From Fimbriosthenelais zetlandica (Eukaryota), in NCBI GenBank assembly GCA_977030845.1, contig OZ365112.1, positions 9,176,001-9,240,000 on the forward strand: 64,000 nt of DNA. Direction: 5' to 3'. The position numbers and the translations under genes were made by a program. Shown here in pieces: positions 3,101 to 61,309 of this stretch. Below the pieces are notes generated by a model, which ran no database searches, was not told the origin of the DNA, and was given only the letters and a program-made list of their open reading frames with translations. Positions within the stretch are counted from its first letter, which is position 1. Each line of letters starts with the position of its first letter.

Positions 3101-6100
3101 TCCCCCCACCTAGCGGTCACTCTGTCACCTACTGACCGCTTCCCATGTCAATATTGATGGATGAGATGTCCATAACACGAGGTTAAACATGTTAGTTTAA
3201 CATGTTAAGCTCATTTACTCTCACACTGCCAAACTCACCTCTCACAGTGTTTGACTTTAGGCTGTTATACTTCACCACAAACCCGGAAATGTTATACTTT
3301 GTGACGTACTGTTTAGAAGATTAGATCACTAAGAAAATGTGACTATTAAAATTGACATTCTGAGTAGTAACATTGTTTTAAGCTGATATTTGTTGTTTTA
3401 TATGTGAGGGACAAGGCACCAAAGAGTCCAAACTTAATATTTGTTATTTTAATAATATTTTACCAATGTATTTTATGTTGTAATTTCAATTCTAGAGACC
3501 AATTTTATGGAGAATTTGACATGAATAGTCCTACAGAGAAGTAACAACCTCCTCCTTAAAGCGTCTGTGTCACTACGGACCAATAAATGGTCAGGAAAAA
3601 TGTATTTGACACTAGAAAACTTACTCACGACAATTTACATTATTGAGAATCCACTGTACATGTATATTATGTGTATATTATCTGATATGATCTCTAAGCA
3701 GATTATATTAATTATATATTTTTATTCATTTATTTTTATATTTATTTATTTTTGATTACAGAACGGTATGGGGTCGCCTATAAAGTTGTACAGGACTGTA
3801 GAGGAGCATGAGAGTGAGGTGGGAGCTAAGTTATCTAAACACTCTGACGCTGTCACTTCATGTGAGGAAATAGTCATGGTGGTGCACCCTGGAAAAGGTA
3901 GGAGAAATAAAGCATTAAATAATTAGATTTAAAGTGATGTTTATTAAATAAATGATGGAGATTTGTTCGTGTCACTAAACCATACATAAAATACTGGCTT
4001 TTTCCGAAGTAAAACATGCAATAGGTCCCAATTACTCTATTCTGAACACCCTTATTTTATTTTTTTTTAATTCAGACACTTTCCTTAAACCGGAATATTT
4101 CTGGAGCCAATTCTCGAATTACAATACAAAATAATGAGCCACAAATAAATAATAAAAAATGACCAAAACTTTCAGGATATTCTGAGTCGTCCTAATCTGC
4201 GTATTTCTTTAATACCTTTGAGTTTGAAGATTTTTATTGCACATAATTATTGCACTTATTACCTTTGTATAAATAATTCATAATAATCCATTAATTTTGT
4301 AAATAATTGCATTTTTTTCATATTATAGAGATGAGGAACATGGCTGAGGACATGCATGAGGAGTTACATCGTGACTGTGAACCTGAGGAGAGAGAGCAGC
4401 TGAATCACAGTCACACAGTCCACAGTCACGGTCACAGTCACGGACCCCTACCTCAGAGCATCTCAGCCGTAGCCTGGATGGTCATCATGGGAGACGGTAT
4501 ACATAATTTCAGCGACGGTCTCGCTATAGGTCAGTATTCATTCATTCATTCATTCATTCATTCATCTATTAATACCCATCATCTATCCCATCTATCTTTG
4601 GATCTTATAGGTCAGTAGCTATGTTTCATTCATTAATCCATTCATTCATTCATTCATTCATTCATTTACAATCAATTCTGTAACAAAATGCCATAGATGG
4701 TAACTTTAATGAAGTATGACCAGTAGCAAATATGCACGATATGTTATTATTGTTATAACAAGACTTCAATTAATAATAAATAGATCGTTTTCCGAAACAA
4801 AGAAGAATATAGGTCTACGTCATAACCTGCGTCATTGCACTCGATGTTTTAATAATATTGTATGAAAAGTATTTCTAAACATTTTGTTAAGAAGCCCAGT
4901 TGTTCTTCCACATAATCCTATAATGCTACAATTATTTACCCATACATCCCTTCATCCCTCCATGNNNNNNNNNNNNNNNNNNNNNNNNNNNNNNNNNNNN
5001 NNNNNNNNNNNNNNNNNNNNNNNNNNNNNNNNNNNNNNNNNNNNNNNNNNNNNNNNNNNNNNNNNNNNNNNNNNNNNNNNNNNNNNNNNNNNNNNNNNNN
5101 NNNNNNNNNNNNNNNNNNNNNNNNNNNNNNNNNNNNNNNNNNNNNNTTAATGTATACTTGTGTTACCAGGTGCCGCCTTTGCTAACAGTCTGCCGGGTGG
5201 ACTGAGCACCACAGTGGCCGTCTTCTGTCATGAGTTACCTCACGAGATTGGTAAGTAACACATATACCCCCGTTGTACAAGTACCGTATTTGGCGGTGTA
5301 TAAACCGCACCCCCTCGTCGCTCGCCAACCCTCGTCATTGACGAGGTTGCTTTTACAACACTCTGGTGACTGTATAGTTTACAAATGTCCCATTACAATA
5401 TTTGGAGGGAAATCGTCTCTACTCCCCCAAACATATCGGAGAAAATTCGTCAAATCTCGACATAAGAATTAGATAAGAAGGTCCCTTCGTCCCTTGCACC
5501 ATTATATATGATACTATTTATACCTATATTTTATTTTGTAGGTGATTTCGCAGTTTTACCTCCTATAATTTATTTTTTTGGGGGGTGGTGGGGGGGGGGG
5601 GGCTGGGGGTAGATTTCCTTCTCATAAAATTGTTATTCATATGCTATTTTTTAGGTGATTCGTCGGTGTTGCCTTCTTGTATTATATATTTATTTATTAT
5701 TGTAGGTGATTTCGCGGTGTTACTGCGGGCCGGGATGACGGTGAAGCAGGCTATGATGTATAACTGCGTGTCGTCCATACTCTGCCTGTTTGGTATGATT
5801 GTCGGTGTCTGTGTGGGGAACATAGGATCAGTCAGTCTCTGGATCTTCGCCTTGGCCGGAGGCATGTTCATCTATATCGCCCTCGTCGATATGGTGAGTA
5901 GAAAATAAATCAACTACACATAAATTCAAGATAAAAGGCTTAAAACACTCAGAATGTCCACAAAGAAAGCCATAGCTAAGGGAAAAATTGGGGAAAATGC
6001 TTTTTCAAGATCAGTGAGAAATCTTTTGGGAGAATTTTGTGAATGGTCATTGAAAAGGAAATTCTTGGAAAATGTCAGAAACTTTGGGCAACCCCGCTTT

Positions 6101-7436: not shown

Positions 7437-9021
7437 TCTTTGTTGTGCTTTATTGTTCGTCTTTAACATTAAACCGCCTAGTATTTTCCCCTTTGAGGGA
7501 TTTAGTTTTCAGCTAATTTTCTATAAAATTGCTGATAATTTTAAGCATAATAATTATGCCTAAACTAGTGATAAAAAGGGTTTTATGATATGATATTAAT
7601 AGCAATATTTTTTGTGCCTTAGTTAGGTCTTTAACTTCCAATTTATTTATGAAAATGTTTCTCTGAAATGATACTGACTCAGATTTTGTCAACCACTCAG
7701 TCTCCAACTCGTTTGAAATACTATTTTTCACAAAGTCCAGAAAAATGCACGATTAATTCATGCATATTTTCAATGGCAATGCACAGAATCAAACCAGATT
7801 GTTCCTGCTGTGTACTTATATTCCTTTGTTACATTTTTGCTAAAGTATTGTCAACAAGTGTTCGCCAGAACTTGAAAGGCTTCTTCACTGAGAGTGAGTG
7901 TGATACAATGCTTTTAATACGGTACTCCACACAAAGTTGCTCATATTTCTACTGATTAGTTAGTATTTGGTGTCCCTACACATTGTGATAGCTAGAGCAA
8001 TACAGTAAAGCCTCGCTATTTTGGACACTTTGAGACTAAGAACTAGTGTTCACTATAACTATGAAGGACGTATTCCCTAATCAGAGATGCGAAACACAAC
8101 ATCTTGGGACTGAGGAAGTGTAGATGTTGCATAATCCTATAATATACAAAACCTCAAGGATTTGAGTGCACTATATGCATGTGTTCCCTAATGAGAGGAA
8201 ATCGTATTTGGCACCTCAACAACATGAGAAAGTGTTCACAATTCAGAGGTGTTCCTTAAATAGAAATGTTCACTAAGGGATGTTTACAGAAGACGTTTAC
8301 TTAACATTTCTTTGTCTCTATTTTATATCAAAGATTGAATCTCTTCAATACATATCTATTGCTAACGTTATTTTTTTCTGGGGAAACTTTTCTATTTTTA
8401 TTCTGGAATCTATTCAGTACTTTTACGATCATAAAGTCCACTAAAGTGGCATTCAACTGTTATGTTCTCGAAGAAAGATCTGTTTTACCTATTTTTTTGG
8501 TTGATTTTTTTTTGTTCTAATCAAAATCGAGGATTTGATACTCAGTTATAGGATAGACTTTGATACGATACTCAGTTATGGGATCCATGTTGCCAGTAAA
8601 ATTGTCCTAATATGAATTGTCTCATTTGGTGCCTTCATATCCAAATCTTCTGAATATTGATAGATGAACTATGTGCATATTATTTATTTGTTATTGGTCT
8701 CTACATTGGATGGAATTTATTTTCCATTGATATTGTTTGATCGGTGGGTATTAGGTGTAAATTTTATGTCACGGGCGTTACATATTATTTAATTTATTTA
8801 ACGATGCTCTCTAATGTTGTCATGCATGTGTGATTTAAAGTACATTCTATTTCACTCAGAGATGTATGGTGTCTTTTGAAGAAAAGATTCGCTACAGCAA
8901 TAAGAGAAGTTTTCTTGCATAATAATGTATAAGAAAATGATTGCATTTGCAATAAATTTACTGTCTCGTACCTACTATTTTTGCTCGTTCATTATTAAAA
9001 ATAGTGGCATACTATGATTAA

Positions 9022-11444: not shown

Positions 11445-12920
11445 ATGGCACGGGAAAGTACTTGTAAACGTTATCTGTGTTTCACAACGGCGATGAGTAT
11501 ATTTAGCGTGGCATTGTTCACGTACTACGTGCAAAATGGATTATGGCTGCCACAGCCTCTTCTAGTACGACACAATCCTGTGGAATGCCCGATAATTTGG
11601 AGGCCAAAGGGATTAACAAATACATCTCTTGGATTCAAATCATCTGATGTCTTACAGGAAAATCACTGTTCTTGGGACTTTGATGGGATAAATAAAGCTC
11701 ATTACAGAAAAGCAATTTCAAACTTGAAAAAAATAGTCGATCGTTCAGAGCAAGAAAGGTTTAAACCTCTGGACTACCTTCCTCTACATTTTTCGTCAGT
11801 TAACTTGGACAATCCTGTTGCCTTTCAACATATAGACTATACTGGAGGATACGTGCTATCTGCTTTTATTGACAGGAGAGTGGAGAGAACGCCAGATGTG
11901 AGAGTGTTATATCTTGTGCCTTTTTCCAGTCCCACTCTCTTTTGCCAAACTTATTGCGAAAATTCCTACATAGCAGTCAAAGGCCGGCCTATGTTTTTGC
12001 CCTATTTCAGTCCTGCCCATCGCAACTGCATTTGGCAGCAGTATTTACTGCACTGTTTGTTTCCCCCGATTTGTGATATTCAGAATGTGTCAGTAACTTC
12101 CTCTCCTTGTCTTACACCCACTAACTCACTACAGGTTTTACAAACACATGCTCCCTACAAATCATCAACAACTTTCGCTTTGTGTGTAAATCACCTTTTT
12201 CGCTTGGGAGAGAAAGACCTTTCTTTATTCGTCAGAGCAGTTGAATCATTCCTTATGATAGGAGGAGAAAAGATATACATGTATGGCATGGAAAATGTTC
12301 ATTCTAAAATCAAGGCAGCAGTGGATTTCTATATAAAGCGAGGGGTGATCATCTTTTATGACTGGAATGTACCATCAGATGTTACATCTGTGTTCTATTA
12401 TGCCCAGGTGCTTCAGAATATGGACTGCATGTACAGACATATGATCGACACGGATAAACTTTTCTATCTTGATTTGGACGAGATCTTCATCCCAATTCAA
12501 CATGATAATCTTACCCAGTTGTTCAATGAACTGAAACGAGATAAGGCTTATTTCCATGAGGCAGGGTTCCATTGCCAAAGAGTTCGCTTCCCATCCTTAA
12601 ATTCAGGTTCTGGAAAATATGATGTTTCCGCGGCAAGGGAAGGAAACGTTCTCTGTATCGAACCTCAGCCGAAACCTATAGCGAGTCCTAAAAAAACTGT
12701 ACAAATTTCGGTACATACCATTGATCAACCACTCAGACCCTTTTCCATTGGTGGATCCATTGAAACTGATCTTGCTGTTGCAATGCATATGAAAAGTCAT
12801 TCATGTGAAACCAAGGAATTTATTACTGTTCCAGAGAAAACCCTCCGAACAATAAAGAAAAAATTGAAACTCATCGAGAAAAGAACAAACATTGCCATGA
12901 AAATAATATTCCAGAAATGA
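11445..12920 (+). CDS. Glycosyltransferase family 92 (DUF23/PF01697)-type type II membrane protein, 491 aa, single coding exon
   Basis: N-terminal TM anchor (YLCFTTAMSIFSVALFTYYV); SAFIDRR; FALCVNHLF; KIYMY; IFYDW; YYAQVLQNMDCMYR; DxD motif in YLDLDEIFIP. Motif order fits GT92 as I recall it. Confidence 0.85.
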   Translation: MARESTCKRYLCFTTAMSIFSVALFTYYVQNGLWLPQPLLVRHNPVECPIIWRPKGLTNTSLGFKSSDVLQENHCSWDFDGINKAHYRKAISNLKKIVDRSEQERFKPLDYLPLHFSSVNLDNPVAFQHIDYTGGYVLSAFIDRRVERTPDVRVLYLVPFSSPTLFCQTYCENSYIAVKGRPMFLPYFSPAHRNCIWQQYLLHCLFPPICDIQNVSVTSSPCLTPTNSLQVLQTHAPYKSSTTFALCVNHLFRLGEKDLSLFVRAVESFLMIGGEKIYMYGMENVHSKIKAAVDFYIKRGVIIFYDWNVPSDVTSVFYYAQVLQNMDCMYRHMIDTDKLFYLDLDEIFIPIQHDNLTQLFNELKRDKAYFHEAGFHCQRVRFPSLNSGSGKYDVSAAREGNVLCIEPQPKPIASPKKTVQISVHTIDQPLRPFSIGGSIETDLAVAMHMKSHSCETKEFITVPEKTLRTIKKKLKLIEKRTNIAMKIIFQK

Positions 12921-13189: not shown

Positions 13190-13570
13190 ATTGTCGTTAG
13201 ACGCAAATTTGATTCAATATGGAATAGAGCCATTAGATATACCTTATAGTCCAGCAGTTACCGATCACGACCAAGTGTTAGAAGAATTTTTAGACTCCTG
13301 TGTATGATGTACAACCTTAAAGGCTCACCACATTTATTATCAGAAACAACATTTGATACAAGAGCTCATGCTGGTCCTCTATTTAAAATAGAAAGGTTTA
13401 AATCGAACAAATTCAAAAACAGCTCATTTTGTGTCGGTAGAACACTATGGAATAGGCTTCCCATCGATATACGCCTATCTCCAACAAAAAGTATTTTTAA
13501 ATCCAAGTACATTTTCTTAGTAAATTTGGATATGAAGATTTTGATGAAACATTGTTATAAGTATTTTTAA
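13190..13570 (+). mobile_element. Degenerate 3' end of a CR1/L2-group LINE ORF2
   Basis: ORF 13304-13570 contains FKNSSFCVGRTLWNRLPIDIRLSPTKSIFKSK, the typical LWNxLPxxxxxxxSxxxFK post-RT tail; YGIEPLDI upstream in another frame. Confidence 0.7.
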
Positions 13571-13634
13571 GGTTTGTAAAACACCAAAACTCTACACTAG
13601 AGACAGTTTCAATTTTTGTGGTGGCTTTTTATTT

Positions 13635-13672
13635 GTCCAACGTTTCGGCAGGTTACTGCCTTCCTCAGGGAC
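13635..13672 (-). ncRNA. Minimal type I hammerhead ribozyme (Penelope-type)
   Basis: Minus strand: GUCC-CUGAGGA-A-GGCAG-UAAC-CUGCC-GAAA-CG-UU-GGAC. Core CUGANGA/GAAA, 5-bp helix II, palindromic ACGU helix III, 4-bp helix I (GUCC/GGAC). Confidence 0.8.
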
Positions 13673-13944
13673 TAGCTGTTTGCATTTGGGGACTATCCAT
13701 TGGGTAGTCAATTTTTGTGCACTTAACTTTTGTTTAGACAGTTGCTTGGTTACTAGAATAACAATGAGTTGCTAGGTGGCATGGTTTAAAACGATAACGA
13801 GGCATATCTGTAGTTAGTTGGTTTTATTAGTACTGTAGATTTACATATCAGCTGGATCTTGGTTGTAAAAAAATTGTTTTCATACAAGTATGATTCTATA
13901 TTTACACTGATTTATACGACTATAGATCGGTCAATATGACTTAA

Positions 13945-14741
13945 TTATTTCATCCTTGGGTATTTTGCTAGATTATTTCTCACCATGGAGTCATAAAGGT
14001 CCATTCCAATGTCTTGATTGATCTTATATATTATTCGGTACAGGTCATGTAAGATCTCTTGGGTTGGAATATGCAATAATATACCGGTATTAGTTTCTTT
14101 CTTAGTGGTCGGGATATAGGCGGGTATTGGTTGGATCGGGGAGCCTGGGTGGTACTCTTCATCTCGGTTGGATGTATCTGTATGACTGTTGTTCGTGGTT
14201 TGTTTAGTAGATGGCGGTGGAGTAGTCGGACGGTTGTCAGCCTCCTCATCACTGTCATCCGATAGTTCTAGGTCCTTCTGAACCATTTTTAATAAGTCTA
14301 TACAGCTGGTATCACTGTGTGGTGTTTCCACTGTGGGTGGTGTGTGGTCCTCATTGTGATTGTTGGTTTCATTTAGTGATGTGTTGGTTGAGTTCGAGTC
14401 GCTGTCGCTAGATGGCGCTGGGGAGCTATCACTACTGGATATACTGCTACACTGATGTTGCCGTGGTTTTTTCTGTGTGATGGTCACGAGTGGATGGGCA
14501 GTACGAGGTCGTTTTCTCTCAGTACACGGTAATGAGCTGAGTGGCAGTTCGATTGCTTTTCTCTTCGGTTGTGGTTTACTAGTGTTGGCTCGTCTGATGA
14601 TGTTGTTGAGGCGCTTTTCCCTCTCCGTGATCGGGTTGGTTCTGTCCGTGGACGTATTTGATGGTGGCGCTAGCGTGTTACTTCTATCAGTAGCCGTGGC
14701 GAGCACGTCCCTTTCGGCTGCAGATGGTACAGGACTCTTTC
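13945..14741 (-). CDS. Uncharacterised Ser/Thr/Pro/Asp-rich protein with basic patches and a ~50-aa possibly folded C-terminus
   Basis: Stop-free for about 265 codons; KPQPKRK and RKRPR NLS-like patches; C-terminus GILLHIPTQEILHDLYRIIYKINQDIGMDLYDSMVRNNLAKYPRMK. Start codon unresolved. Confidence 0.5.
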
Positions 14742-15717
14742 CTGCAAATGCAAGGGTCAGCGTACACAATGTTAAATTTCACTTTTGCAGGTGGTGGTAT
14801 TGGTTTACATTCATGTTTAGGTTTCTCGTGGATTCTTATTACCAAATCCGATGGAGATGGAGATGGCGATGGAGATGGCGATGGCGATGGAGCGAGAAGG
14901 TGTTGGCGTAATAATGCCCACAGATGAGGCATTCCAACTTACCCCGCACAGTCTTGGTGTTGTCACTGCTGCCATGTTCTTCGTTATATTCTACTTATTG
15001 TTATAAGTAATTTGAGTCTGAAGGAAAAGTCCCCAATCGATGAATTGCCCAAAGACTTACTTGCAAAGCAAAACTTTCATAGGAATAATATGAATTATAT
15101 GGCTCCCAAAAAGATACAAAACCACAAAAATATCAAAAGATAATCTGACGCCATGATGTCGTGACTGTCAGATGATTCGGTGCATTATCTGTGGCTATGA
15201 AAGCATGTTGATGTATAGATGCTGAATGCCAAGCTTTTCTTATTTTATTCAGATTTGGACGACTATTGGGCTGCCATATCACACTATAGGTTTGTTATTT
15301 AGTACATTGCCATGAAAATACATACCCACTGATCCATATGACATTGTATAGCATGTAGTTGTAGGCTACTGAGCTGTCTGTGACCATCCCAGTTTTTAAG
15401 TGTTCTAAATACAGGCTATAGCCAACGAGTATAATGGCTGCTGCTTTTTGGTATACATGCAATTATATTTTATAATTATGTGAACAGTCACTACATGTAT
15501 TGTAATGCATTTACAACGTGAAAGTCATCACAAATGAGTTTGAAATATTCCTTTGATTGAATGCGTATGAAATTCTATAAAGTTTAATTATGGATACACG
15601 TAATGAATAAAGATATTGTAACATAGCCAACATTAAATGGTTAGTTAGTATTTAATGGTTAAATCTCGCTATTAATGTCACCACCCTATGTTTCTAAAAT
15701 ATAAATCTAAAATATAA

Positions 15718-59629: not shown

Positions 59630-61240
59630 TAAATCCCTTTTCGATGTTACCTGGATCGCTACACATTTTATAAGCTACTGATAAGCATTGTTGATTTGGG
59701 CTTTTTTTCGTTCGAGTTGCTGAGGGGAGGGGGCGGTCGGGGTTTAATATTGATTGGAAGGCAAATCCAATGCAGACAGCTTAGATCCTGCTCTGCGTTT
59801 TGTCTTCCTCCGCGCTCTCCCTTCTCTGCGTCAAATGCCGCCCCCTTCAGTGCCCCTCTGGCTTTGCGAAAATCCCGCCCGTGGCCTCTGCAAGCCCTCT
59901 GACCACTGAAGCGTTAAAAAAGTTGAGGCTATTTTTGGCATATTTTCTCTCCAACTTTACCTCCTCCCATGATCCTTTGCGGCTCGATTTTTAAGAAGTT
60001 GAATATCTCCGCAATTAAGGGGTCTAAAATTACAATTGAAACGGATTATTCTTAGTTGGGAGCACCTCCAGGGGGCTATGTGGTTTTTATTCCAATAAGA
60101 TTAATTTAAAATTTCAGATTATGAAAATGGACCGAATTTTCGCTCTCAGCATTGATCCCTATGGAAGAAGCAAACAATGCGACAGTGGCGACCCGAGATT
60201 TTCAGCGGAAAAAAGATGAACTACGCGGCTAAGATCTACCCAACGATACCAACGCTCTCAAGTACTCTTGGCTTATATCAGAGAGGGGTGGGATTGTCCG
60301 GTATGGGGAGTGGGTCAGAATTGTGGTGGGACTTAGGGATGGGGCGGGACGGGGGCTAAATAACATTGAGCAAAATTAATATTTATGTTTTTTTTTAATT
60401 TATTTTATTTCTCGAAAACTACTAGGCCTAAAATTACGATCTGAACGGGGAAATCTCAGTTGAGAGCCGAAGTATGTTAGTACACACTTTTTGAATGAAT
60501 AAAATTGATTTAAAACCTGAGATTTTGAAAATGTGCTGATTTTTCGGGGTTGACACCACCAATGCTAAATTGTCTGTTAGCTTTACTGAAACTGGATAGA
60601 GAGAGCCCTGGTGGTTCACATTGTCGCCGCTGGAAATCTCGGGTCGCCACTGTCGCGCTTGCTGCTTCTTCCATAGGGATCAATGCTGAGGGTGAAAATT
60701 CGGTCCATTTCCAAAATCTGAAATTTTAAATTTATTGTATTGGAATAAAAACCACATAGCCAGCTGGAGGTGCTCCCAACTAAGAATAATCCGTTTCAAT
60801 TGTAATTTTAGACCCCTTAATTGCGGAGATATTCAACTTCTTAGAAATCGAGCCGCAAAGGATCATGGGAGGAGGTAAAGTTGGAGAAAAAATATGCCCA
60901 AAATAGCCTCAAGTTTTTCAACGCTTCAGTGGTCAGAGAGCTTCAAGAGGCCACGGGTGGGAGGTTCGCACAGCCAGATTGAGGGGCACTGAAGGGGTGT
61001 GGCATTGGATACAGAGAAGGGAGAGAGCGGAGAAGGAAGAGGAAGAGGAGACGCCGCAAGGCAGGATATATATCTAAGCTTGGATAACTAGCTATATTAT
61101 ATATTGAAGCAAAGAGGCCATGCAACGATTAACTCTATGGGACTTAGTTCCTCTCGCCCCCGCCCTCCTCTCATCAGCTACTCAAACAACAAAAAACCAA
61201 AGCCAAAATCAACACTCTAAGCAGCTTATAGTGATTAACA

Positions 61241-61309
61241 ACACGGTGATTCGAACCCCGGTCTCTCGCATTCCGGGCGAGCGTCTTACCTCTAGACTAC
61301 CACGCACAC
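61241..61309 (-). pseudogene. tRNA-like head in right foldback arm
   Basis: Minus strand: D stem gtct/agac, anticodon stem ctcgc/gcgag with loop ccggaat, T loop ttcgaat; acceptor stem unpaired. Confidence 0.65.

What the first reader, a model, noticed from the sequence alone, without database searches (positions are those of the whole stretch)
13635..13672. Minimal hammerhead ribozyme on the minus strand
Seen: all core nucleotides CUGAGGA/GAAA/UH, helix I GUCC:GGAC, helix II GGCAG:CUGCC, and helix III reduced to self-complementary ACGU. There is one extra A before helix II. Known: minimal type I hammerheads with a palindromic helix III occur in Penelope-like element repeats and are thought to cleave as dimers. 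Only one copy was noticed in this window, so cleavage would need a partner in trans or a tandem or circular transcript.
Basis: partly seen in the sequence, partly recalled or inferred. Interest (0 to 1): 0.75.

Follow-up and report, generated by a model that had tools for sequence, protein, structure and literature searches.

The report
Penelope-element minimal hammerhead ribozyme copy
The motif is a genuine minimal hammerhead ribozyme, but an ordinary one: it sits about 70 bases from the end of a broken, 5'-truncated copy of a Penelope-like jumping gene, a kind of element already known to carry such ribozymes.

Summary
Minus strand 13672-13635 reads GUCC / CUGAGGA / A / GGCAG-UAAC-CUGCC / GAAA / CG / U / U / GGAC. 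It is the only match to a min-hammerhead descriptor in the window, against 0 in 300 simulated windows. Rfam models do not detect it.

It is not a free-standing gene. It lies in the last ~110 nt of a 1.43 kb insertion (window 14996-13564, minus strand) flanked by a 13-bp target-site duplication. That insertion is the 3' part of a Penelope-like element (PLE), 5'-truncated and frameshifted. Elsewhere in this genome a degenerate full-length relative (L048) carries the same ribozyme-plus-tail module in both 423-bp flanking repeats, around a reverse transcriptase/GIY-YIG region.

The genome holds at least 66 near-identical copies and several sister families. These covary in helix I and helix II. Helix III stays palindromic (ACGU, AGCU, AUAU), and the unpaired A after A9 is always present.

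This matches the "min-HHR" class of Cervera and de la Peña 2014 feature by feature. Cleavage was not tested, and no RNA run was listed. The scan had already reached the same reading on other DNA of this genome.

Two side observations: short copies start 1-6 nt upstream of helix I, never at the cleavage site; and this PLE lineage has a conserved second ORF.

The parts
13635..13672 (-). Minimal type I hammerhead ribozyme motif (helix I GUCC/GGAC, core CUGAGGA...GAAA, unpaired A, helix II GGCAG/CUGCC with loop UAAC, palindromic helix III ACGU, H17 = U at 13639)
   Evidence: at least 66 genomic copies with <=3 mismatches and 0 in the reversed-pattern control
13564..13634 (-). 3' tail of the element (AAAUAAAAAGCCACCAC ... 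ACAAACCUUAAAAA), always found together with the ribozyme in genomic copies
   Evidence: 38 of 38 tail-ascertained copies are preceded by the ribozyme 3' half
13564..14996 (-). Whole insertion: 5'-truncated Penelope-like element copy (the region after the endonuclease, plus ribozyme and tail), 1433 bp
   Evidence: Collinear homology to the region downstream of the GIY-YIG domain in L047, L048 and L049, and to L050 (97%) and L051 (78%)
14997..15009 (-). Upstream copy of the 13-bp target-site duplication TACTTATAACAAT
   Evidence: read directly
13551..13563 (-). Downstream copy of the target-site duplication TACTTATAACAAT
   Evidence: read directly
13945..14985 (-). Remnant of the PLE lineage's second ORF. 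It is 5'-truncated inside the first C2H2-like finger and split over three frames. The longest piece is 13945-14769, 274 aa.

Best explanation
The 38-nt motif is a min-hammerhead ribozyme of the Penelope-like-element (PLE) class. It was carried to this locus passively, as part of the last ~110 nt (ribozyme plus ~70-nt tail) of a PLE RNA. That RNA was copied into the chromosome by target-primed reverse transcription, which left a 13-bp target-site duplication and a 5'-truncated 1.43 kb copy. In the active source elements the ribozyme lies in the terminal direct repeats (pLTRs) and is kept by selection. Its core, helix I, helix II, the unpaired A and the palindromic helix III are conserved or covary, while the flanks diverge. 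Helix III is only ACGU with no loop, so a single copy cannot close it. Catalysis would need two copies pairing ACGU:ACGU in a double hammerhead (tandem pLTRs on one transcript, or two RNAs), probably helped by the element's protein. At this locus the copy is solitary and sits in a frameshifted, promoter-less fragment, so it is most likely an inert relic. Shown here: the anatomy, the element context, the copy number, the covariation and the PLE link. Inferred only: cleavage, dimer dependence and the biological role (processing of multimeric PLE transcripts and/or a structured recognition module for the reverse transcriptase).
For: The motif is complete and unique in the window, with 0 hits in 300 simulated windows.

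Copy number: 66 genomic copies with <=3 mismatches against 0 in the reversed control. Variation is concentrated at N7 and loop 2.

The window copy is flanked by a target-site duplication.

Link to a PLE: L048 has 423-bp direct repeats at 98.6% identity, each with the ribozyme. They flank a region that aligns at 33-37% aa identity to intact RVT_1 + GIY-YIG ORFs (L037, L041), followed by an ORF2 that is 50% identical to the window ORF.

Selection between lineages: the upstream 100 nt is ~61% identical and the tail 66-74%. Yet only 0-1 of the 33 constrained ribozyme positions differ in four comparisons, and 2 differ in the decayed 5' repeat of L048.

Covariation at positions left as N in the search patterns:
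- Helix I: GUCC/GGAC, UACC/GGUA, UAAU/AUUA, AAUC/GAUU, UAAC/GUUA.
- Helix II: GGCAG/CUGCC, GGCC/GGCC, GGAC/GUCC, GGGC/GUCC.
- Helix III: ACGU, AGCU, AUAU.

The double-hammerhead pairing is energetically feasible, at -22.7 kcal/mol against -24.4 for two monomers.

[quoted passage not shown] The Poseidon (Anolis) PLE ribozyme is protein-assisted and dispensable for insertion in vitro (PMC11167929).
Against: There is no experimental or read-level evidence of cleavage, because no RNA run was listed for this stretch. Rfam hammerhead models do not score it. None of 38 tail-ascertained copies begins at the predicted cleavage site, so cleaved RNA does not appear to be a frequent template. Published min-HHRs cleave poorly in vitro (PMC4209133), and HHR-less PLE clades proliferate well (PMC8557442), so the self-cleavage role is itself uncertain.
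Confidence: 0.9

Rival explanations
1. The ~110-nt ribozyme-plus-tail module is itself a small non-autonomous element. It would be a SINE-like parasite of PLEs or a solo 'non-LTR retrozyme' monomer with its own 5' end. The window copy would be one long variant of it, not a truncated PLE.
For: In the 194-nt query search, 23 of 40 scored copies begin 75-93 nt into the query, and 16 of those begin 1-6 nt upstream of helix I. TSD-flanked ~110-bp insertions are seen in L001, L004, L011, L018, L019 and L021. No copy is truncated inside the ribozyme or the tail. Animal retrozymes are reported to be pLTR derivatives of PLEs, with many solo monomers (bioRxiv 10.64898/2026.07.22.740005).
Against: The window copy and several others continue upstream, collinearly, into PLE internal sequence (ORF2 and the endonuclease C-terminus) with varied 5' ends. 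Among the 66 copies no short tandem arrays (100-400 nt spacing) were seen. The discrete 5' end could equally be a reverse-transcription stop or a transcription start inside the pLTR of ordinary PLEs.
Confidence: 0.25
2. A chance match to the hammerhead consensus, or a conserved sequence kept for a non-ribozyme reason such as a protein-binding hairpin for the reverse transcriptase, with the catalytic core coincidental.
For: Rfam gives no hit. The loose core pattern alone is at chance level in the window, with 10 matches against 8 expected. The PAc ribozyme is dispensable for in vitro insertion (PMC11167929).
Against: The full descriptor gave 0 hits in 300 simulated windows. Independent families keep all core nucleotides while changing both strands of helices I and II compensatorily, and keep helix III palindromic. 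This is the signature of a hammerhead fold, not of a simple hairpin.
Confidence: 0.05

Closest known systems
min-HHR of metazoan Penelope-like elements (Cervera and de la Peña 2014, PMC4209133)
   Same: Type I topology; 4-bp open helix I; helix II of 5 bp starting G10.1-C11.1; one unpaired nucleotide between A9 and 10.1; helix III reduced to a palindrome; located in the PLE terminal repeats near the 3' end; most genomic copies solitary and truncated; several covarying consensus families per genome.
   Different: Nothing structural. Helix II (5 bp) is at the short end of the 6-8 bp described for Schistosoma and Drosophila. This lineage's element also has a ~1.9 kb region after the endonuclease, containing a second ORF, between the endonuclease and the ribozyme.
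Poseidon (Anolis carolinensis) PLE hammerhead, PAc (PMC11167929)
   Same: A PLE-borne hammerhead close to the site where reverse transcription starts (the 'tail'). Its cleavage is protein-assisted and not required for insertion in vitro. That fits the absence here of copies starting at the cleavage site.
   Different: In PAc the ribozyme overlaps the ORF start. Here it lies ~1.9 kb downstream of the endonuclease stop codon and ~70 nt before the element's 3' end. No biochemistry was done here.
Animal non-LTR retrozymes (tandem type I HHR repeats giving circular RNAs; bioRxiv 10.64898/2026.07.22.740005)
   Same: A type I hammerhead derived from PLE pLTRs; non-autonomous; dispersed solo monomers exist.
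   Different: No short tandem arrays of this family were seen. The window copy carries PLE internal sequence. Circular RNA was not tested.
Rfam Hammerhead_1 (type I, e.g. Schistosoma, newt satellite)
   Same: The same catalytic core and the same order of helices.
   Different: Those models include a helix III hairpin and loop-loop contacts. This motif does not reach any score.

Membership tests
Hammerhead ribozyme (catalytic core) | Conserved core C3 U4 G5 A6 N7 G8 A9 ... G12 A13 A14 ... U16.1 H17 | tested here: met
   CUGAGGA at 13668-13662, GAAA at 13646-13643, UU at 13640-13639. The core is invariant across genomic families.
Hammerhead ribozyme (catalytic core) | Helices I and II supported by compensatory changes | tested here: met
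   Helix I: GUCC/GGAC, UACC/GGUA, UAAU/AUUA, AAUC/GAUU, UAAC/GUUA. Helix II inner pair: C-G, A-U, U-A, G-U. These positions were left as N in the patterns.
Hammerhead ribozyme (catalytic core) | Site-specific self-cleavage 3' of H17 | not testable with these tools
   No RNA run was listed. No genomic copy starts at the predicted site.
Hammerhead ribozyme (catalytic core) | Match to the Rfam hammerhead covariance models | tested here: not met
   No hit at gathering score or at E<=10. This is expected for a motif lacking a helix III hairpin, and the min-HHR class was defined with a dedicated descriptor (PMC4209133).
PLE min-HHR class | Unpaired nucleotide between A9 and 10.1, G10.1-C11.1 pair, palindromic 15.2-16.2 | tested here: met
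   A at 13661, G13660-C13647, and ACGU at 13643-13640. Other families in this genome show AGCU and AUAU.
PLE min-HHR class | Located in the terminal direct repeats (pLTRs) of an element encoding RT plus GIY-YIG endonuclease | tested here: met
   L048 repeats 2022-2442 and 7568-7990 each carry the ribozyme. The internal region aligns to RVT_1 + GIY-YIG ORFs and has a GIY-YIG Pfam hit. The window copy itself has only the 3' part.
PLE min-HHR class | Activity as a dimer (double hammerhead) | not testable with these tools
   Only the energetic feasibility of the pairing was computed.
Non-LTR retrozyme | Short tandem repeat units, each with a type I hammerhead | tested here: not met
   There is a single copy in the window. 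Among 66 genomic copies the closest same-strand pairs are 900 and 2780 nt apart.

The most novel reading that the evidence does not exclude
The ribozyme-plus-tail module (~110 nt) may be the minimal retrotransposable unit of this PLE lineage, with a defined RNA 5' end at AGCUA, 5 nt before helix I. That end could come from an internal pLTR start site or from a processing event. In that case the hammerhead fold would serve mainly as the structured handle recognised by the reverse transcriptase, not as a self-cleaver. This would explain why copies never start at the cleavage site and never end inside the module.
Probability: 0.25. Interest if true: 0.5.

Novelty: new member of a known kind. Interest (0 to 1): 0.22.

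Why it matters
For annotation, this site should be labelled as a relic Penelope-like element fragment with its built-in minimal hammerhead, not as a new ribozyme gene or a new system. The genome offers several covarying min-HHR families and a sharply bounded ribozyme-plus-tail module. That makes it a convenient data set for the open question of what PLE hammerheads are for: transcript processing or recognition by the reverse transcriptase.

Tried and rejected
1. Rfam at gathering score and at E<=10 gave no hammerhead hit. This is uninformative for this class.

2. The loose pattern CUGANGA...GAAA...UH is at chance level in the window. A structure-aware descriptor was needed.

3. I first thought the window, C31 and C25 copies shared one 5' end, which would imply a discrete 1.4 kb non-autonomous family. 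This is rejected: tblastn shows that L050 and L051 continue upstream into the endonuclease C-terminus, and the apparent common start is only the window copy's own end.

4. A possible intron (GGgtaagt ... tttgcag) in the element is rejected. The 'gtaagt' lies inside conserved C2H2-finger coding sequence (GKLECLICGH), and the frame breaks are ordinary frameshifts relative to L047.

5. The RT ORF next to L012/L033 belongs to an LTR-type element (RVT_1 + RT_RNaseH), and the RT next to L047 belongs to a LINE (APE + RT + RNase H). Neither is the ribozyme's parent.

7. The RNA run search listed none.

8. The ORF2 word search found no homologue, and the Atlas search showed only C2H2-like features.

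9. No covariance model was built.

Full report
**Observation.** On the minus strand, window 13672-13635 reads GUCC CUGAGGA A GGCAG UAAC CUGCC GAAA CG U U GGAC. This is a complete type I hammerhead. It has:
- an open 4-bp helix I;
- the core CUGANGA ... GAAA;
- a 5-bp helix II that begins with G10.1-C11.1;
- one unpaired A between A9 and G10.1;
- a helix III reduced to the self-complementary ACGU;
- H17 = U at 13639.

The predicted cut therefore falls between 13639 and 13638.

A descriptor encoding these features finds this one site in the window on both strands. It finds none in 300 simulated 64-kb sequences with the same dinucleotide statistics. The loose core pattern alone is at chance level. 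The 38-mer's minimum-free-energy fold is exactly helix I plus helix II, at -12.2 kcal/mol. A double-hammerhead pairing of two copies is energetically feasible, at -22.7 kcal/mol against -24.4 for two separate monomers. Rfam reports nothing, even at E<=10. That fits a motif without a helix III hairpin.

**It is a repeat.** The window's assembly has 447 Mb in 79 contigs and is a eukaryote; earlier notes of this scan call it an animal. It holds 66 copies within 3 mismatches (32 forward, 34 reverse) and none for the reversed-pattern control. Differences sit mostly at N7 (G or A) and in loop 2.

Aligning 30 copies shows what is shared. The common unit begins a few bases before helix I (AGCTA|GTCC) and ends ~70 nt after the ribozyme at ...ACAAACC(C/T)TAA(A). 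It is flanked by AT-rich 9-15-bp target-site duplications.

**The window copy.** It is flanked by TACTTATAACAAT at 15009-14997 and at 13563-13551. The insertion is therefore 14996-13564, 1433 bp, on the minus strand.

Its internal part recurs elsewhere with varied 5' ends, all running to the ribozyme. This is the 5'-truncation pattern expected from target-primed reverse transcription.

**Link to Penelope-like elements.** A GIY-YIG scan of the genome placed endonuclease domains directly upstream of sequences homologous to the window element, on C14, C27 and C29.

Locus L048 (C14) is a degenerate full-length element. Two direct repeats, 2022-2442 and 7568-7990 (423 bp, 98.6% identical), each contain the ribozyme; here it is the variant with helix II GGCAG-CCUC-UUGCC. 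Between them, 3644-5950 aligns at 33-37% amino-acid identity to intact ORFs from other loci (L037, L041). Those ORFs score RVT_1 and GIY-YIG in one frame, which is the canonical architecture of an endonuclease-positive Penelope-like element.

The linker before the GIY-YIG domain has a CX4CxxC motif, of the kind noted for Neptune-type elements in PMC8557442.

Downstream of the endonuclease stop lies a second conserved ORF, then the ribozyme, then the tail. The window's 274-aa ORF (13945-14769, minus) is 49-50% identical to that second ORF in L048 and L049, and 37% identical to the one in L047.

The window copy starts inside the first C2H2-like finger of this ORF and is broken by frameshifts. 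The window element is thus an ordinary, dead, 5'-truncated Penelope-like element fragment. The hammerhead is its built-in 3' module.

**Selection and covariation.** Between lineages found independently of the ribozyme (L048, L047, L031), the 100 nt upstream are ~61% identical to the window copy and the tail 66-74%. Of the 33 ribozyme positions outside N7 and loop 2, only 0-1 differ in four of the five comparisons. The decayed 5' repeat of L048 differs at 2. The change shared by both L048 repeats turns a G-C pair into G-U.

Pattern searches that fixed only the core and the GG...CC of helix II found further families:

| Helix I (5'/3') | Helix II (5'/3') | Helix III | H17 |
|---|---|---|---|
| UACC/GGUA | GGAC/GUCC | ACGU | U |
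| UAAU/AUUA | GGCC/GGCC | ACGU | C |
| AAUC/GAUU | GGCC/GGCC | AGCU | A |
| UAAC/GUUA | GGGC/GUCC | AUAU | U |

Compared with GUCC/GGAC in the window's family, helix I changes on both strands at up to all four pairs. The free inner pair of helix II appears as C-G, A-U, U-A and G-U. Helix III stays palindromic. The unpaired A after A9 is always present. The reversed-pattern controls gave 0 hits for these patterns.

**Comparison with the literature.** Cervera and de la Peña (PMC4209133) defined exactly this class. [quoted passage not shown] The copies are mostly solitary motifs from truncated elements and fall into covarying consensus families. In vitro they saw no monomer cleavage and weak dimer or trimer cleavage.

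A 2024 study of the Anolis Poseidon element (PMC11167929) found its hammerhead to be protein-assisted and dispensable for insertion in vitro. It found no RNA-seq ends at the cleavage site. Craig et al. (PMC8557442) note that hammerheads sit in pLTRs near the 3' ends, that 5' truncation is pervasive, and that the function is unclear.

An earlier follow-up of this scan (s1-191765) reached the same reading for another copy on other DNA of this genome. I tested that reading independently here.

**Mechanism.**
- Shown: the anatomy, the element context, the multiplicity, selection and covariation, and the link to reverse transcriptase/GIY-YIG elements.
- Inferred from family knowledge: in source elements, two copies (tandem repeats or two RNAs) pair through ACGU:ACGU to form a double hammerhead. 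This may process multimeric transcripts, probably with the element's protein.

At this locus there is no partner within 64 kb, and the host fragment is truncated and frameshifted. The copy is therefore most likely inert.

**Side observations.**
1. In an unbiased 194-nt query, 23 of the 40 best-scoring copies begin 75-93 nt into the query. Sixteen of these begin 1-6 nt before helix I.
2. All 38 copies ascertained by the tail alone are preceded by the ribozyme's 3' half. None begins at the predicted cleavage site or inside the tail. The ribozyme-plus-tail module thus behaves as a sharply bounded minimal unit. A transcription start or processing site at AGCUA, or a reverse-transcription stop, would explain this. 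Ribozyme cleavage would not.
3. The second ORF after the endonuclease has two C2H2-like fingers, a Ser/Thr/Pro-rich middle, an acidic stretch and a conserved C-terminal block. It has no Pfam hit, no word-search homologue and only C2H2-like Atlas neighbours. Canonical endonuclease-positive Penelope-like elements are described as single-ORF (PMC8557442).

**Limits.**
- No RNA run was listed, so expression and cleavage are untested.
- Genome-wide counts are lower bounds.
- Covariation is read from pattern-search listings, not from a formal alignment-based statistic.

**Verdict.** It is an ordinary new member of a known kind, and its interest is low.

Noticed in passing
L047:6431-7627, L048:5960-7256, L049:3023-4319 (minus); window 13945-14985 (minus): This PLE lineage carries a conserved second ORF downstream of the RT-GIY-YIG ORF. 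The endonuclease ORF ends ...LKM-TGA at the same place in three copies. ORF2 has two C2H2-like fingers, a Ser/Thr/Pro-rich middle, an acidic stretch and a conserved C-terminal block. Lineages are 37-50% identical at the amino-acid level. It has no Pfam hit and no word-search homologue. Canonical EN+ PLEs are described as single-ORF.
   Followed up: partly
genome-wide; L001, L004, L011, L018, L019, L021 around position 1493-1500 of the oriented loci: The 5' ends of short TSD-flanked copies pile up 1-6 nt (up to 14 nt) upstream of helix I. No tail-bearing copy (0 of 38) starts at the predicted cleavage site or inside the tail. The cause is unknown: a pLTR start site, RNA processing, or a reverse-transcription stop.
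   Followed up: partly
window 14946-14951 and 14738-14745 (minus): A splice-donor-like GGgtaagt and an acceptor-like tttgcag inside the element are not an intron. The donor-like site lies within conserved finger coding sequence (GKLECLICGH). The frame changes are frameshifts around a (CCATCG)n microsatellite at about 14860-14900.
   Followed up: yes
L031 (G000:C25:33983500-33991500): A ~2.78 kb unit is tandemly duplicated (92% identity). Each unit carries a hammerhead module and an ORF with a weak CD225 hit. It is unclear whether this is a PLE-style partial tandem or a segmental duplication.
   Followed up: no
L039, L040 (G000:C21:21057017-21060193; C32:591230-594457): Long open frames combine a PIF1-like helicase with a GIY-YIG domain. 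This is a different GIY-YIG-bearing mobile element family, unrelated to the hammerhead.
   Followed up: no
window 11445-12920 (+) and 13304-13570 (+): A 491-aa ORF with a glycosyltransferase family 92 domain lies ~650 nt from the element. An 88-aa ORF abutting the element's 3' end looks, by eye only, like a C-terminal fragment of a non-LTR retrotransposon ORF2 (...LWNRLP...).
   Followed up: no
window 61236-61306 (minus): A tRNA-like match at 35 bits (gathering score 29), with several non-canonical acceptor-stem pairs. It may be a tRNA-derived repeat or a pseudogene.
   Followed up: no
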